From positions 310,001 to 374,000 of the forward strand of contig NIVC01000930.1 in NCBI GenBank assembly GCA_002269645.1: DNA of 64,000 nucleotides. The letters are read 5' to 3'. This stretch comes from Macrostomum lignano. Its lineage: Eukaryota. Of this stretch, positions 10,676 to 24,970 are shown one piece after another; the stretch's first letter is position 1; each line of letters begins with the position of its first letter. The notes below the pieces were generated by a model. That model was not told the DNA's origin. It ran no database searches and saw only the letters and a program-made list of their open reading frames with translations. A program made the translations under genes and the position numbers.

Positions 10676-10698
10676 CCCGATTGAAAATCGGGGGCCCC

Positions 10699-11250
10699 AT
10701 CGGCACTGACTGCCGACGGATCGGCACTGGTCTGTCGGCACTCAGAGTGTCCGGTAAAGTGGCTCATATCGGCACCGACGGTCGGTACTGTCGGTACTGA
10801 ACATCGGCACTCGCCGTCGGCACTGACCTAGAGCCTTCGCCGCACCCTCGCCCATTCGCCGTCGGCACTCATGTCGACACTCCCGTCGGCACTCATGTCG
10901 GCACTCCCATCGGCACTCCCATCGGCACTCATGTCGGCACTCCCGTCGGCACTCCCGTCGGCACTCCCGTCGGCACTCCCGTCGGCACTCATGTCGGCAC
11001 TCCCGTCGGCACTCACATCGGCACTCATCGACACTCCCGTCAGCACTCCCGTCGGCACTCAAATCGGCACTCATCGACACTCCCGTCGGCACTAAATCGG
11101 CACTCATATCGGCACTCAAATCGGCACTCATCGATACTCCCATCGGCACTAAATCGGCACCCCTGTCGGCACGTAGGCCCGTAGGCCCGTATATCGGTAC
11201 TCCCATCGGCACTCATGTCAACCCTCATATCGGTACTCACATTGGCACTC
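10699..11250 (+). repeat. Left subterminal repeat array of the transposon ([AG]TCGGCACT motif)
   Basis: Dozens of GTCGGCACT/ATCGGCACT copies immediately inside the left TIR, as expected for CACTA subterminal protein-binding repeats. Confidence 0.9.
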
Positions 11251-12269
11251 ATTGGCCCTCGTGTCGGCTCCCATATATCGGAGGCATTTTGTGTCGTGAA
11301 TCAATGGAATAGTTAATTACGTTATTAGTGTAATGGCAAAATTATATTAAAATAAAATTAGACCTGTGGACGTGAGACAGCAATTTAACTCCAGCATCAC
11401 TGAATCACCGTACACGTACCACGTACATGTATCCCCTATCGAGCATGCGTTCCATAAAGAAGTGGCAGGCAATGCAGGAAATATGGACAGAACAGTGTAA
11501 TTGTCACATAGATGGTGGCCAAAAGTAGATACATGTATAAATATTACCCATTTATTTGGATGACTAGCCTTGTAAAGGCTCGACAGTTGACCGAGGCGAA
11601 AGCAGAAGGGAATTGGTGCCAATCGACAACTGTTGCGTGGGGATGGTAGGCAACGAATTATTCACGTATAAAAATAAACAAATAATAAAACAGAAACTGA
11701 ACCCTGCAGAGAGACTCGGATTTTGGGCACACGTACGCGTGCTATGTGTTCTGTTAAAAGGAAATGACACACAATTTAATAAAATGCTGCCCCTTCGCTT
11801 GCTACTACAACTACTACTTCTACTACTACAGCTAGCGTCTACCTACTTCTGGAAGTAACTGGACCTACGTTATACTTTGCTACTTATATTACTAATCACT
11901 TATAGCGGGACCTCCAAATACCATCCGACTCCCATAAATGTCTGAGGTGGGGTGGGGTTTGAGGTGGATGCTCGCATCGGAAATGTAAGCGGGTCTTTGG
12001 TGGTCATTACGGTATAAGCAGGTGCAAACTAATGCTCAAAACTTAAAACTTAAAACTTAAACGTAAAAGCTTAAAACTAACTTCTTAGCTATAATGCTAT
12101 ACGCATTTAGAGTAATGCTAGAAGAGTAAGGAAACTAAGGCTATATAATACTTTTTTCTTCAAGGGTCTATCAATGGCATCGTGGACGTTACGTGGTCCC
12201 CCAACTGTGCTAGGAATTATACTTCAATACTTTAATTAAACATACAATCCCCGCGTCCTAGACCCCGAC

Positions 12270-14476
12270 TTAGGCCCCTAGATCGCTGTCGCCCTTGTCG
12301 CCGTCGACATGGGCCGTGTCGCTGCTGGGGCCAGTGCCGCTGCCGTTGCCAGTGCCGCTGCTGGGGCCACTGCCGCTGCTGGGGCCAGTGCCGCTGCCGT
12401 TGCCAGTGCCGCTGCCCTTGCCAGTGCCGCTGCTGGGGCCAGTGCCGCTGCCGTTGCCAGTGCCGTTGCTGGGGCCAGTGCCGCTGCCGTTGCCAGTGCC
12501 GCTGCTGGGGCCAGTGCCGCTGCCGTTGCCAGTGCCGCTGCTGGGGCCAGTGCCGCTGCCATTGCCAGTGCCGCTGCTGGGGCCAGTGCCGCTGCCGTTG
12601 CCAGTGCCGCTGCCGTTGCCAGTGCCGCGGCCGTGGCCGGTGCCGCTGCGATGGCTAGAGGCCGGCCGGCTGCTATCGCTCTTATGTTTTTTGCTGTTGT
12701 GGGTGCCGTGGCCAAAAGCCGACTTTGAATGACGGCTGTCGTCCTCATCAACACCATCGGGCCTGCTGCGCTTGCTGCTCTTCCGGATGGAAGCGCCGTC
12801 CCCGCTGGTGGGCGCCTCCTTGTCGGTCCGCCTTCGCTTCTGATGCTGGCTGGCACTGCCGGCGTCAGCATCAGCCTGATCATCAGCAGTTCCGGTGGCA
12901 GCGGTGGGGTTCTGATCGTCAGGCCTGCTGTTGGCCTTGTTAGCGGATTCGCGTTTGGTCTTGTTCCTGCATGCGGTGGGCGTGGAAGATTAGGAAATGG
13001 AAAGTGCATCTAATTAACTACATATCGACAAGCATTCCAGGAATCCTTTATTCCCAATCATATGGCATACTGTTGTTTAAGCAGTATATAAGGCACGTAG
13101 TGCACTATTACAGTATTATATTACCGTAGTTATGCAGCCCATATAACCATTGCCACTGCTACCCTTTGTACTAGTGCTACCACTTTTATGATAGAACACC
13201 GTATTCCTTACCGCAAGGTGACCTCCTTCACTGCGCCGAAAGCACGCCCCAGCAGGCAGGTTCCACTGCTGGGGTCCGTAGTCGGAACTTTGACGTCGCT
13301 TAGGAAGGCAATAATGGCCTCCCTTTTGGCCTCAGGGATGGGCGGCAGGTTTCTTCCGCCGTCCCACTGGCGACCGGTGAAGGAGCAATTCAGCTGCTCC
13401 TCCTCCGTGAAAACTTCACGACAGAGAAGGCGCAGAAGCGCCTTCTGGCTCGTCTGCGTTTTTTGCCTATGGAACGCTGCTACGGTGCTGCGCATCGGGC
13501 CGAAGAAACTGTGCCTAACAAAGACAGCCGGGTGAGACCCTACTAGCGGTACCAACTCATCATCCGAGTTCCTCGCCGTCTGGGATGCTTCGTCCAGCCT
13601 TGGGAGCGCACACCGCATGCTAGCCGCGACCGTCGATCGCAGTGCGCCACTCAAGCTTCCAAGCCGCGAATCCGCGGGCGCCGTGGCACTGGCCGTGACG
13701 TCTACCATGTCCCCGCCTCCCACAGAGGCCATGGATGGCATCTGAAGTGTGTGATCTGCGATCTTCATACCACACGACTCATCACTGGACGCGATTGCTG
13801 CAGCTGTCTGCTCCATGAGCTCCTGTTGAGCACTTCCCAGGCAAACAGCCGTCTTGTGCATGGCCTGCAGCAGCGTCTGCTGTATCGCCGTCACCGCTTT
13901 GAGCTGATCTGCCGATCGACGCCAGCGCTCGTAGAAGACGTCATGAGCACCTTGCTGTTCAGCGTCCCCCAGCTGTTCCAGCTCCTTCTTCGCCACGTCC
14001 AGCTCCGAACGCAGTTTTTCCACCTTTCGCTCCAGGTCCTCCACCACAGCACTGTGGACCTCCCGCTGGGACTCTTGCAGGTCCTGCATCTGGCGGAGAC
14101 GCGTCTTCAGGGTGCCAACCTCCTGCCGGTAGCTGGCGCACATGCTGCAACCGTCGTCCGGGAGGTCAACAGCGCCACTGGCCACCAGGAACTTCTTCCG
14201 GAATTTCCCAAGCTCCTTTAGGGCTGTATTCCGTGGACCAGCAATTGGTCCGTGTACCAGTTCGACAGCTTGCGCCTTGCTTCGCTGGCTAGTACGGGCC
14301 TCTACGTGCTGCCCTTCCGCATAGGGGCCGCTGCCTGACGTACCTTCGGCCTTGATGTACTCCTCAGAGAACAGGTCGTTTTCGCCGGCGCTGCGTCCGG
14401 CGAGAATCTTGCCAACCCAGTAGCGTGGAAATTGTTGGTCATTAGTCGTCGTACGCTTGCGTCTGGCGTTCAGCAT
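12270..14476 (-). CDS. Transposon-borne coiled-coil + BEN-domain protein with a Gly/Ser/Thr-repeat tail (exons 14476-13212, 12966-12270)
   Basis: ORF 14476-13208 has an N-terminal beta-rich segment, a CSMC motif, a long heptad region, then LVPLVGSHPAVFV...KALLRLLCREVFTEEEQLNCSFTG...LPPIPEAKREAIIAFL, a BEN-like pattern. A phase-2 intron (CG|gtaagg...catgcag|G) continues in frame as RNKTKRESANK...QKRRRTDKE...(GTGNGS/GTGPSS)n...DLGA* to TAA at 12272-12270. The start codon is uncertain and an upstream exon is possible. Confidence 0.75.
12318..12640 (-). repeat. 18/36-bp coding tandem repeat within BEN gene exon 2 (encodes GTGNGS/GTGPSS)
   Basis: Alternating GCTGCTGGGGCCAGTGCC / GCTGCCGTTGCCAGTGCC units on the plus strand. 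Confidence 0.9.
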
Positions 14477-23895: not shown

Positions 23896-24643
23896 TGCCA
23901 CGAAGACTTTTGGCAGCTGGCTGAAATGCGCTAGAGGATATGCGCATGGGAGACATGTCAGATGGTATTGCGAAACTACAGCTTTAAAAAATATCCATGT
24001 TGTTGGATTGTCTTTCAAGTTGTCTAAAGCCATGCGTATCATCAATACATGCTCTATGCCCCATGCTCCTATGCTCTAGATCTATACATGCCATTAGAAC
24101 ACCCTTTCTACTGAGACAGTCCCAGTCCCGTTCAGGACCCAAGTGTATGATGTAAAAGCTGTATTGCATAAGTCTTACTGTCAAAGTCTCACAAAGTCCT
24201 ACGAAGAGTCACACAAAGTCCTACAAAGTCTCACAAAGTCCTACAAAGAGTCTCACAAAGTCCTACAAAGAGTCTCACAAAGTCCTACAAAGAGTCACAC
24301 AAAGTCCTACAAGGGGCTACAAAATCCTACAAACAGAACTACCACAAAGTCGTACAAACTGTTACAAAGTCATGTCGGTAGTAGCCTTTGCTCACAACCT
24401 GAATTCATGGCAATATCTGCTACATCTCTGTACGACTTCTATCCGCCAATGCCGTATAACGTTTGCAACAAAATCAATGAAGGGTCGCTATGAATCGAAA
24501 CGTCGCATATTGAAGCGTGGGCTTTGTTGGATACTTTAGCCAATGCAGTTCCTGATTTATTTTGTGTGGGACACTTGCCAAAATAGCATGAAATTAGACG
24601 CATAGAAAATTAAGAGAACATGGGGACAGATAAAGACATATCG

Positions 24644-24952
24644 ACAGTGCCGACGGGTAGTGCCGACGAGCAGTGCCGACGGGTAGTGCCGACATGTCGG
24701 CACTACTGGGCAGTGCCGACGGGCAGTGCCGACGGGTAGTGCCGACGGGCAGTACCGACGGGTAGTGCCGACATGTCGGCACTACTGGGCAGTGCCGACG
24801 AGCAGTGCCGACTAGTGCCGACATGTCGCACTACTGGGCAGTGCCGATACGACGGGTAGTGCACAGTCGGCACTAATCAGATACTGAGTGCCGATCGACA
24901 AATCGACCCTGACTGCCGACAGGCAGTGCCGATCGGCACTCGGAGTGCCGAC
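24644..24952 (-). repeat. Right subterminal repeat array of the transposon (AGTGCCGA[CT] motif)
   Basis: Many AGTGCCGAC copies, the reverse complement of the left-end motif, immediately inside the right TIR. Confidence 0.9.
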
Positions 24953-24970
24953 GGATTTTCAATCGGGCTG

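What the first reader, a model, noticed from the sequence alone, without database searches (positions are those of the whole stretch)
10676..24967. Giant cargo-carrying CACTA/EnSpm transposon in an animal: transposase + F-box/LRR + BEN-domain gene
This is a fully delimited 14,292-bp element with exact 14-bp TIRs starting CCC, a 3-bp TSD and mirrored subterminal arrays. It holds three co-oriented, spliced, apparently intact genes. Plant CACTAs carry TnpD (transposase) plus TnpA (repeat-binding) and sometimes captured gene fragments. An animal element carrying a complete SCF substrate adaptor and a BEN DNA-binding protein is not something I recognise as described. The combination suggests a self-contained module: a transposase, an end-binding partner and a host-protein degradation factor. 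This is the best candidate for a new system in the window.
Basis: partly seen in the sequence, partly recalled or inferred. Interest (0 to 1): 0.95.

Follow-up and report, generated by a model that had tools for sequence, protein, structure and literature searches.

The report
Flatworm CACTA-like transposon with F-box gene
This is a real, complete and very recently active 14.3-kb cut-and-paste DNA transposon of the flatworm Macrostomum lignano that carries its transposase, a BEN-type DNA-binding partner gene shared with related elements, and an extra F-box/LRR ubiquitin-ligase adaptor gene found only in this family.

Summary
Window 10676-24967 is bounded by exact 14-bp inverted repeats (CCCGATTGAAAATC) and a 3-bp duplication (CTG). 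It has mirrored subterminal TCGGCACT arrays and three intact, spliced, co-oriented genes on the minus strand.

The window is Macrostomum lignano contig NIVC01000930.1. At least three further independent insertions in that assembly are 99.75-99.9% identical and carry the same three genes. Two of them have their own 3-bp duplications (ATC, TTA).

The transposase belongs to the CACTA/EnSpm-Mirage-Chapaev (CMC) superfamily. It keeps D170, D260 and E534 plus the C(2)C and H(4)H motifs, and its relatives hit Pfam Transposase_21.

The BEN gene is not cargo. Four other lineages place a coiled-coil/BEN-like gene just downstream of a related transposase: a 43%-identical sister family in the same genome and three metagenome contigs. 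The two of these with complete ends have CCCG... termini and their own subterminal motif.

The F-box/LRR gene is the real lineage-specific addition. Its fold matches FBXL2 and FBXL17, and it is absent from the other four lineages.

The element is not giant, is not CACTA in the strict sense, and animal CCC-ended CACTA relatives were described in 2006. I rate it a new variant of a known kind. The roles proposed for the BEN and F-box proteins are inferred, not shown.

The parts
10673..10675 (.). Target-site duplication CTG, left copy
   Evidence: the same CTG lies at 24968-24970.
10676..10689 (+). Terminal inverted repeat CCCGATTGAAAATC. This is the 3' end in the element's own orientation.
   Evidence: exact match. 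The same TIR bounds copies L001, L003, L006 and L007.
10700..11252 (+). Subterminal array of about 26 TCGGCACT units, period 12 bp
12270..12966 (-). BEN gene exon 2: basic, NLS-like tail and a variable GTGNGS repeat, ending in stop TAA
   Evidence: It matches P0002/P0003. Repeat number differs between copies.
13212..14476 (-). BEN gene exon 1: N-terminal conserved domain (W20, GP, CxxC), coiled coil, and BEN-like domain (about aa 300-420)
14597..15081 (.). Nested 485-bp MITE with 12-bp TIR CAGTGTTGGGCA and 8-bp TSD TCAGTAAG. It is a passenger in the spacer.
15326..15339 (+). Internal TIR-like sequence CCCGATTGAAATTT (2 mismatches) in the F-box/BEN spacer
   Evidence: It is present in the other copies except L003.
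16195..16673 (-). F-box/LRR gene exon 4 (C-terminal LRRs, stop)
16842..17306 (-). F-box/LRR gene exon 3
17513..17603 (-). F-box/LRR gene exon 2. The annotated model P0164 instead uses a GC donor at 17459.
17757..18374 (-). F-box/LRR gene exon 1: F-box (aa 23-66) and first LRRs
   Evidence: Pfam F-box-like 1.2e-12. PDB sequence hits FBXL2 and SKP2. Fold hits FBXL2-SKP1 and FBXL17-SKP1.
19433..19888 (-). Remnant of a related element: solo TIR-like CCCGCTGGGAAA (19844-19855) plus a transposase fragment
   Evidence: It is absent from copy L003.
20331..20894 (-). Transposase exon 3 (conserved C-terminal domain, stop TAG)
21157..22998 (-). Transposase exon 2: CxxC..CxxC zinc finger and the DDE core (D170, D260, C279xxC282, H509x4H514, E534 in the numbering of ORF 21127-22815)
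23185..23895 (-). Transposase exon 1: start MDFAKH, basic stretch, variable 60-bp (20-aa) acidic/Ser repeat
24645..24951 (-). Subterminal array of about 19 TCGGCACT units, mostly inverted relative to the left array, period 13 bp, with palindromic pairs
24954..24967 (-). Terminal inverted repeat (5' end in the element's orientation)
24968..24970 (.). Target-site duplication CTG, right copy

Best explanation
Window 10676-24967 is one copy of an autonomous, very recently active cut-and-paste DNA transposon of Macrostomum lignano. It belongs to the CMC (CACTA/EnSpm-Mirage-Chapaev) superfamily.

**Shown**
- A DDE/zinc transposase is present with all conserved residues.
- The element has 14-bp CCCG... 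TIRs, a 3-bp TSD and mirrored subterminal 8-mer arrays.
- Several near-identical copies sit at different sites.
- A conserved second gene encodes an N-terminal domain, a coiled coil and a BEN fold. It follows the transposase in five related lineages.
- A third gene encodes a complete F-box/LRR protein and is found only in this family.

**Inferred**
- The transposase cuts at the CCCG termini and integrates with a 3-bp staggered cut.
- The BEN protein dimerises through its coiled coil and binds the reiterated subterminal GTCGGCACT units. This would bring the ends together and/or regulate the element. It would be the functional analogue, not a homologue, of maize En/Spm TnpA.
- The F-box/LRR gene was acquired as DNA, with its introns, into the spacer between the two core genes. 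Its product docks on host Skp1-Cul1 and directs ubiquitination of a host protein or an element protein. This would benefit the element, for example by removing a silencing or repair factor or by tuning transposase level.
For: **Ends and arrays.**

**Organism and locus.** (P0001, M. lignano). L005 is 100% identical over 14,292 bp with the same flanks.

**Mobility.**
- L003 has TSD ATC and L006 has TSD TTA. L001 and L004 have different flanks.
- Copies show 0.1-0.25% mismatches, and all carry the three genes with intact splice sites.

**Transposase.**
- 3270 relatives at E<=1e-3.
- Relatives at E about 1e-35 hit Pfam Transposase_21 and DUF1258.
- D170, D260, C279, C282, H509, H514 and E534 are invariant. 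This matches the C(2)C and H(3-4)H definition of the CMC(T) clade in PMC12730594.

**BEN partner conserved in other lineages.**
- Sister family L002 spans 7391-16491, with TIR CCCGCTGGAAAA, TSD AAG, TTACGCC arrays, a transposase and a coiled-coil/BEN ORF.
- L008, a marine metagenome contig, holds a full element with TIR CCCGCTGAAAAAA.
- L009 and L010 have the same gene order. The L010 ORF scored 5.7e-11 against a profile that did not include it.

**BEN fold.**
- The AF2 model has pLDDT 83.
- The top 9 Foldseek PDB hits are all BEN-DNA complexes.
- The profile's only PDB hits are BEND6 and NACC1.
- Pfam BEN gives E=0.003 on the sister protein.
- UniRef names P0002 a 'BEN domain-containing protein'.

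**F-box/LRR.**
- Pfam F-box-like 1.2e-12. PDB sequence hits FBXL2 and SKP2.
- The model shows about 11 beta-alpha LRR units. The best folds are FBXL2-SKP1 (1e-9) and FBXL17-SKP1.
- No relative of this gene occurs in L002, L008, L009 or L010.
Against: - The transposase itself has no direct Pfam hit even at E<=10. Its CMC assignment is transitive.
- Termini are CCC, not CAC/CACTA.
- One M. lignano copy (L001: CAG/TCA) and the metagenome element (L008: AAT/CCT) lack a TSD. I attribute this to assembly chimeras or recombination between 14-kb near-identical repeats. That was not shown.
- BEN sequence evidence is below curated thresholds. The window protein has no Pfam BEN hit, and the Foldseek E-values are 0.07 or worse.
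- No binding, expression or excision data exist here.
- Copies are too young for dN/dS. There are 0 substitutions in the F-box CDS and 0-5 in the other genes. Selection on the F-box gene is therefore untested, and it could be a neutral passenger.
- Some copies have 1-bp frameshifts, mostly in homopolymer runs. These could be real inactivating mutations rather than long-read errors.
Confidence: 0.75

Rival explanations
1. The F-box/LRR gene is a passively captured host gene (transduplication, as in Pack-CACTA or Pack-MULE elements). It gives the element no benefit and hitch-hikes in a family that expanded too recently for the gene to decay.
For: - It is absent from four related lineages.
- It lies in the spacer between the two core genes, which also holds a nested MITE and a remnant of another element. 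That region clearly tolerates insertions.
- Copies differ by 0.25% or less, so intactness says little.
Against: - It is a complete 4-exon gene with start, stop and canonical splice sites, not a fragment.
- The public annotation calls a gene model for it, including a non-consensus GC donor that an ab initio predictor would rarely choose.
- The only proteins found at E<=1e-3 were the element's own copies, so no close host parent was detected. That search was limited to 8000 word-sharing candidates.
- Its GC (0.63) and GC3 (0.72) equal those of the transposase and BEN genes.
Confidence: 0.3
2. The repeats are segmental or allelic duplications of a single ancient insertion, or assembly duplicates of a polyploid genome. 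There has been no recent transposition.
For: - L007 shares the window's 5' flank.
- M. lignano carries duplicated chromosomes (own knowledge).
- L001 lacks a TSD.
Against: - Homology to the window stops exactly at the TIRs in L001, L003, L004 and L006.
- The flanks are unrelated, and L003 and L006 each have their own perfect 3-bp TSD (ATC, TTA).
- The L006 copy sits inside a Neur_chan gene, whereas the window copy sits in a DEG/ENaC gene.
Confidence: 0.03
3. The second gene is not a DNA-end-binding partner. It is a transcriptional or chromatin regulator that acts on host genes or on the element's promoter, or it is simply an alternative C-terminal module of the transposase made by read-through splicing.
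For: - Host BEN proteins are mostly repressors or insulators (PMC11601247 and own knowledge).
- Several UniRef models of the sister family fuse transposase, coiled coil and BEN into one 1200-1800 aa protein. This recalls the alternative splicing of En/Spm TnpA and TnpD.
Against: - The complete elements of three lineages pair a different subterminal repeat motif with a diverged BEN protein: TCGGCACT, TTACGCC and CCGG-rich. A protein that reads those repeats would explain this.
- The public annotation calls the BEN gene separately on L001 and L003-L006.
Confidence: 0.2

Closest known systems
Maize En/Spm and other plant CACTA elements (TnpD transposase plus TnpA)
   Same: - 3-bp TSD and short TIRs.
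- Mirrored arrays of short subterminal repeats.
- Size of 8-20 kb.
- A two-protein system: a DDE transposase plus a repeat-binding partner made from co-oriented, spliced transcription units.
- A transposase of the same superfamily.
   Different: - Termini are CCCG..., not CACTA.
- The transposase has no direct Transposase_21 hit.
- The partner is a coiled-coil/BEN-fold protein unrelated to TnpA.
- A third gene encodes a complete F-box/LRR protein.
- The host is an animal.
SmTRC1 and other animal 'TRC' CACTA-related transposons (DeMarco et al. 2006, PMC1636069)
   Same: - Flatworm or insect hosts.
- TIRs begin with CCC.
- The transposase belongs to the Tnp2/CMC superfamily.
- Spliced transcripts.
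   Different: - SmTRC1 is 4.7 kb with 54-bp TIRs, a 2-bp TSD and a single ORF.
- The element here has a 3-bp TSD, 14-bp TIRs, subterminal arrays, and two additional genes.
DNA transposons carrying an accessory gene thought to counter host silencing, such as fungal TET/JBP-encoding EnSpm, Plavaka and Kyakuja elements (PMC12730594). Arabidopsis VANDAL/VANC is a further example (own knowledge).
   Same: A cut-and-paste element, partly of the same CMC(T) clade, carries a complete non-transposase gene between its TIRs and propagates it in every copy.
   Different: The accessory gene here is an SCF substrate adaptor, not a DNA-modifying enzyme or anti-silencing DNA-binding factor. The host is an animal. 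No functional evidence exists.
Viral and bacterial F-box proteins that hijack host SCF: polerovirus P0, nanovirus Clink, poxvirus PRANC proteins, Agrobacterium VirF (own knowledge)
   Same: A selfish genetic element encodes its own F-box adaptor, presumably to redirect host ubiquitination.
   Different: Those are viruses or bacteria. Here the carrier is a chromosomal DNA transposon, the protein is a canonical FBXL-type fold, and the target is unknown.

Membership tests
CMC (CACTA/EnSpm-Mirage-Chapaev) transposase superfamily | [quoted passage not shown] | tested here: met
   D170, D260, C279xxC282, H509x4H514 and E534 are all invariant in 15-sequence and 5-sequence alignments.
CMC (CACTA/EnSpm-Mirage-Chapaev) transposase superfamily | Sequence homology to Tnp2 / Pfam Transposase_21 | tested here: inconclusive
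   There is no direct Pfam hit at E<=10. The link is transitive. The window ORF hits P0012, P0015 and P0039 at about 1e-28 to 1e-35, and these pass the Transposase_21 cut-off.
CMC (CACTA/EnSpm-Mirage-Chapaev) transposase superfamily | Short TSD of 2-4 bp | tested here: met
   3-bp TSDs: CTG (window), ATC (L003), TTA (L006) and AAG (sister family L002). L001 and L008 show none.
EnSpm/CACTA in the strict sense | Termini 5'-CACTA (or CAC...GTG) | tested here: not met
   Termini are 5'-CCCGATTG...CAATCGGG-3'. CCC termini are those reported for animal TRC elements (PMC1636069).
EnSpm/CACTA in the strict sense | 3-bp TSD and subterminal repeat arrays | tested here: met
EnSpm/CACTA in the strict sense | Second protein homologous to TnpA | tested here: not met
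   The second protein has a BEN-like fold and no TnpA-family Pfam hit. It is at most a functional analogue.
BEN domain proteins | Match to Pfam BEN (PF10523) above the gathering score | tested here: not met
   The window protein has no hit. The sister protein scores 18.2 bits against a cut-off of 23.2, E=0.003.
BEN domain proteins | BEN fold | tested here: met
   The AF2 model has pLDDT 83. Foldseek PDB ranks 1-9 are all BEN-DNA complexes (Insv, Bsg25A, BEND6, NACC1, BANP), with TM about 0.5 and probability up to 0.96. The 5-lineage profile hits only BEND6 and NACC1 in the PDB. E-values are weak (0.07-1).
BEN domain proteins | Sequence-specific DNA binding | not testable with these tools
   This needs EMSA or DAP-seq against the GTCGGCACT subterminal units.
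FBXL (F-box plus leucine-rich repeat) SCF substrate adaptors | F-box domain above the Pfam cut-off | tested here: met
   PF12937 at 47.8 bits (cut-off 24.3) and PF00646 at 37 bits (cut-off 20.5).
FBXL (F-box plus leucine-rich repeat) SCF substrate adaptors | C-terminal LRR solenoid | tested here: met
   The single-sequence AF2 model shows about 11 beta-alpha repeats, with pLDDT 60-90 in that part. The best fold matches are FBXL2-SKP1 (1.1e-9) and FBXL17-SKP1 (1.2e-8). The model covers aa 1-372 only.
FBXL (F-box plus leucine-rich repeat) SCF substrate adaptors | Binds Skp1 and recruits a substrate | not testable with these tools
   This needs co-IP or yeast two-hybrid with M. lignano Skp1.
Pack-type (gene-fragment-capturing) non-autonomous elements | Carries fragments of host genes and lacks its own transposase | tested here: not met
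   The element encodes an intact transposase, and the F-box gene is complete.

The most novel reading that the evidence does not exclude
The F-box/LRR gene is a transposon-encoded counter-defence or host-manipulation factor. It would plug into the host SCF ligase to destroy a host protein that restrains the element, for example a piRNA, chromatin-silencing or DNA-repair component. That would make this the first animal DNA transposon known to carry its own ubiquitin-ligase adaptor.

A second, linked reading concerns the BEN gene. Its pairing with the transposase across five lineages marks an undescribed CMC lineage whose end-binding protein is a BEN domain. Some animal BEN-domain genes could then descend from such transposon partners, as BED, THAP and Myb/SANT genes did from hAT, P and Harbinger elements.
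Probability: 0.2. Interest if true: 0.85.

Novelty: new variant of a known kind. Interest (0 to 1): 0.6.

Why it matters
**A usable active element.** Copies are 99.75-99.9% identical, so this is probably a currently or very recently active autonomous DNA transposon. Its host is a transgenic, RNAi-amenable regeneration model. It could serve as a natural mutagen or a tool, and the window copy appears to disrupt a DEG/ENaC channel gene.

**A defined CMC sub-lineage.** The comparative result defines a sub-lineage with CCCG termini, a 3-bp TSD and a transposase plus coiled-coil/BEN partner. It gives a concrete, testable candidate for how animal CACTA-like elements recognise their subterminal repeats. 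I found no description of this pairing in the searchable open literature. Repbase could not be checked.

**A transposon-borne F-box adaptor.** A complete F-box/LRR adaptor propagated inside a transposon is unusual. If it is functional, it would extend the viral strategy of hijacking SCF ligases to animal transposons.

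Tried and rejected
- **Pfam on the transposase, whole protein and P0001.** No transposase family at E<=10. I had to go through remote relatives.
- **Catalytic glutamate.** I first took E436 (the FRGHE motif) as the catalytic E. I rejected it for E534 after reading the C(2)C / H(3-4)H definition. Both residues are invariant.
- **Pfam BEN and PDB sequence search with the window BEN region alone.** Nothing found.
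- **Structure prediction with the 4-lineage alignment.** A 2-row alignment was used instead.
- **Look-up of P0002 contigs.** Not on record.
- **dN/dS among copies.** Uninformative, with 0-5 substitutions per gene.
- **Frameshifts in some copies.** These are mostly 1-bp homopolymer deletions, and I could not tell errors from mutations.
- **Codon and GC comparison with host ORFs.** Not discriminating.
- **2-bp or 4-bp TSD.** Rejected. The third base matches in 4 of 4 TSD-bearing insertions, and the fourth base does not match in the window copy, the only one where I checked it.
- **15-bp TIR (GCCCG...).** Rejected, because it removes the TSD and the extra base is not shared by other copies.
- **The BEN discovery paper (PMC2477736).** Not held.
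- **Literature searches.** Searches for BEN plus transposase, CACTA or EnSpm found no description of such elements. Repbase cannot be searched here.

Full report
**1. The observation**

The coordinates are exact.
- CCCGATTGAAAATC lies at 10676-10689, and its reverse complement lies at 24954-24967.
- CTG lies immediately outside both ends, at 10673-75 and 24968-70. The fourth base outside does not match, so the duplication is 3 bp.
- The octamer TCGGCACT occurs 47 times in the window against 1.6 expected.
  - 26 copies on the + strand lie at 10700-11213.
  - 19 copies lie at 24646-24951, of which 15 are on the minus strand and 4 form palindromic pairs.
  - Tandem periods are 12 and 13 bp.
- All long ORFs inside the element are on the minus strand.

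**2. Organism and locus**

- The 562-aa ORF 21127-22815(-) is 100% identical to a hypothetical protein of Macrostomum lignano.
- A locus fetched through the F-box protein (L005, contig NIVC01000930.1 of GCA_002269645.1) is 100% identical to the element over all 14,292 bp and has the same flanks. It is the window's own locus.
- The host is therefore a free-living flatworm.

**3. Gene models (element orientation = window minus strand)**

- **Transposase:** exons 23895-23185, 22998-21157 and 20894-20331, giving 1038 aa.
- **F-box/LRR:** exons 18374-17757, 17603-17513, 17306-16842 and 16673-16195, giving 550 aa. The partial public model P0164 differs only in using a GC donor at 17459.
- **BEN gene:** exons 14476-13212 and 12966-12270, giving 653 aa. 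This is the same length as the gene called on L005.
- All introns in my models are GT..AG.

**4. It is a mobile, multi-copy family**

Look-ups of the transposase and F-box proteins returned six further places in the same assembly.
- Homology to the window stops exactly at the TIRs.
- L003 has the flanks ...ATC|element|ATC..., and L006 has ...TTA|element|TTA....
- L004 has a different 3' flank (CAG...), and its 5' end falls in an N gap.
- L007 shares the window's 5' flank and is probably an allelic or duplicated copy.
- L001 is the exception, with flanks CAG and TCA. L004's 3' flank begins CAG, as L001's 5' flank ends. L001 may therefore be a recombinant or a mis-join between two near-identical 14-kb copies. 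That is not shown.
- Aligned copies differ from the window by 0.10-0.25%.
- Every complete copy carries all three genes with intact splice sites. L007 ends at a contig end before the BEN gene.
- Several copies have 1-bp indels, mostly in homopolymer runs. These may be long-read errors.
- Substitutions are too few (0-5 per gene) for dN/dS.

That test fails, and the proposed confirmation test passes.

**5. The transposase**

- Pfam finds nothing directly.
- An exhaustive phmmer search finds 3270 relatives at E<=1e-3.
- Those at 25-28% identity (E about 1e-28 to 1e-35) carry Pfam Transposase_21 (Tnp2) and DUF1258.
- Alignments show the following invariant residues: an N-terminal CxxC...CxxC finger, D170, D260, C279xxC282, a C/D(2)H motif (CYLH), H509x4H514 and E534.
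[quoted passage not shown] E534 lies 20 residues after the second His, as in RAG1 (own knowledge).
- The protein is therefore a CMC-superfamily DDE transposase with all expected catalytic and zinc ligands.
- The 3-bp TSD is the EnSpm value. The termini are CCC rather than CAC(TA). DeMarco et al. 2006 reported CCC termini for flatworm and insect CACTA relatives, although those had 2-bp TSDs.

**6. The BEN gene is a core gene, not cargo**

The best transposase relatives (37-43% identity) come from a second M. lignano family (Mlig001703) and from metagenome contigs. The Mlig001703 gene numbering reaches g17.

*Sister family in M. lignano (L002)*
- The element spans 7391-16491.
- Its TIR is CCCGCTGGAAAA and its TSD is AAG.
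- It has mirrored TTACGCC/GGCGTAA subterminal repeats.
- It holds a transposase followed on the same strand by a coiled-coil/BEN-like ORF at 14360-15478. It has no F-box gene.

*Marine metagenome contig (L008)*
- It holds a whole element at 97-10043.
- Its 33-nt TIRs begin CCCGCTGAAAAAA, and it has CCGG-rich subterminal repeats.
- It has the same gene order.
- Its flanks, AAT and CCT, show no TSD. This may be an assembly consensus.

*Other metagenome contigs (L009, L010)*
- Both also have the transposase followed by a homologous ORF.
- The L010 ORF scored E=5.7e-11 against a profile that did not include it.

*Shared architecture.* The second proteins share an N-terminal domain (conserved W, GP, CxxC), a coiled coil, and a C-terminal domain of about 130 aa.

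*Evidence that the C-terminal domain is BEN*
- UniRef names P0002 a 'BEN domain-containing protein'.
- Pfam BEN is sub-threshold on the sister protein (E=0.003).
- The 5-lineage profile hits only BEND6 and NACC1 in the PDB (E=0.15 and 1.1).
- An AF2 model with pLDDT 83 has BEN-DNA complexes as its nine best Foldseek matches among 350,542 chains.
- Each line is weak, but together they converge on BEN.

*Inference.* The complete elements of three lineages combine a conserved TIR core (CCCG-N-T-NN-AAAA) with a different subterminal repeat motif and a diverged BEN protein. The simplest reading is that the BEN protein reads the subterminal repeats. That would make it an analogue of En/Spm TnpA. This step is inferred.

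**7. The F-box/LRR gene is the lineage-specific addition**

- The F-box passes both Pfam models.
- The best PDB sequence hits are FBXL2 and SKP2.
- A single-sequence AF2 model of P0164 shows about 11 beta-alpha LRR units.
- Its best fold matches are FBXL2-SKP1 (1.1e-9) and FBXL17-SKP1.
- The gene sits between the two core genes. The surrounding spacers also contain:
  - a nested hAT-like MITE at 14597-15081 with TSD TCAGTAAG;
  - a remnant of a sister-family element, a solo TIR plus a transposase fragment, at 19433-19888.
- No F-box/LRR relative is present in L002, L008, L009 or L010.
- A protein search found only the element's own copies at E<=1e-3. That search has limited sensitivity.
- The gene has introns, so it was acquired as DNA.
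- Its function for the element is unknown. I propose that it recruits host SCF to a target that matters for the element. I rate the neutral-passenger alternative at about 0.3.

**8. Comparison with what is known**

- In how it works, the element is closest to En/Spm-type CACTA elements. It shares the 3-bp TSD, the subterminal arrays, and a transposase with a repeat-binding partner.
- In lineage, it is closest to animal CCC-ended TRC/CMC elements.
- It is not CACTA in the strict sense, because the termini test is not met. Its partner protein is unrelated to TnpA.
- At 14.3 kb it is ordinary for the superfamily.
- Open-literature searches found no CMC element with a BEN partner and no animal transposon carrying an F-box gene. 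Repbase could not be searched, so prior description there cannot be excluded.
- The nearest conceptual precedent is transposon-borne accessory genes such as fungal TET/JBP (PMC12730594).

**9. Verdict**

This is a real, complete, recently active autonomous transposon. The superfamily is known, and the gene complement is new or at least undescribed in the open literature. I class it as a new variant of a known kind, with interest of about 0.6. The most novel reading not excluded is an SCF-hijacking transposon gene, together with a BEN-partner CMC lineage that could be a source of animal BEN genes. I give that reading a probability of about 0.2.

Noticed in passing
window 14597-15081: A nested 485-bp MITE sits in the F-box/BEN spacer. 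It has a 12-bp TIR (CAGTGTTGGGCA) and a perfect 8-bp TSD (TCAGTAAG), so it is hAT-like, and it contains the (TC)n tract at 14740-14839. L001, L004 and L006 show no large indel there, so it is copied along with the host element.
   Followed up: partly
window 19433-19888 (-), solo TIR-like at 19844-19855: A remnant of a related CMC element lies between the transposase and F-box genes. CCCGCTGGGAAA is the TIR type of the sister family. It is followed by a transposase fragment (FRGHE region) that is about 56% identical to Mlig001703 transposases. The 1.3-kb segment 18825-20119 is missing from copy L003.
   Followed up: partly
window 15326-15339 (+): An internal TIR-like sequence, CCCGATTGAAATTT (2 mismatches to the real TIR), lies in the F-box/BEN spacer. 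It is present in the other copies except L003, which lacks 14952-15714. Its origin is unexplained. It could be an old end, a nested derivative or chance.
   Followed up: no
window 8229-8660 (+) and 10348-10675 (+): The element lies inside a DEG/ENaC-type channel gene (Pfam ASC, 2e-14, on ORF 8229-8660). An ORF stays open right up to the insertion point, and a GTGAGC donor follows 7 nt after the TSD. The insertion probably hits a coding exon just before its splice donor.
   Followed up: partly
L006 (NIVC01001499.1): This copy of the element lies within a ligand-gated ion channel gene (Neur_chan_LBD / Neur_chan_memb) annotated on the opposite strand, presumably in an intron.
   Followed up: no
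L001 9050-9052 and 22907-22909; L004 3' flank: Copy L001 has mismatched flanks (CAG and TCA), so it has no TSD. L004's 5' end is in an assembly gap, and its 3' flank starts with CAG. This is compatible with recombination or mis-assembly between two near-identical copies, but it is unresolved.
   Followed up: partly
window 23233-23658 and 12312-12649: Both the transposase (60-bp / 20-aa acidic Ser-rich unit) and the BEN gene (18/36-bp GTGNGS unit) contain in-frame coding tandem repeats. Their copy number differs between element copies (+60 bp, +54 bp, +90 bp; fewer repeat units in the P0001 gene model on L001).
   Followed up: partly
L002 7391-16491 (NIVC01000822.1): A sister transposon family in M. 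lignano (Mlig001703; gene numbering reaches g17) is 9.1 kb long. It has TIR CCCGCTGGAAAA, TSD AAG and TTACGCC subterminal repeats. Its transposase has more introns, and it carries a coiled-coil/BEN gene. UniRef models fuse the two genes into proteins of 1200-1800 aa.
   Followed up: yes
window 28658, 29694, 30734 (-): CCCACTGTAAAA recurs at a spacing of about 1038 bp, which suggests a tandem repeat of about 1 kb. The rest of the window is rich in coding-looking satellites, for example at 31669-32398, 36728-37324, 38075-39574, 46199-47089, 47682-48502 and 50916-51795.
   Followed up: no
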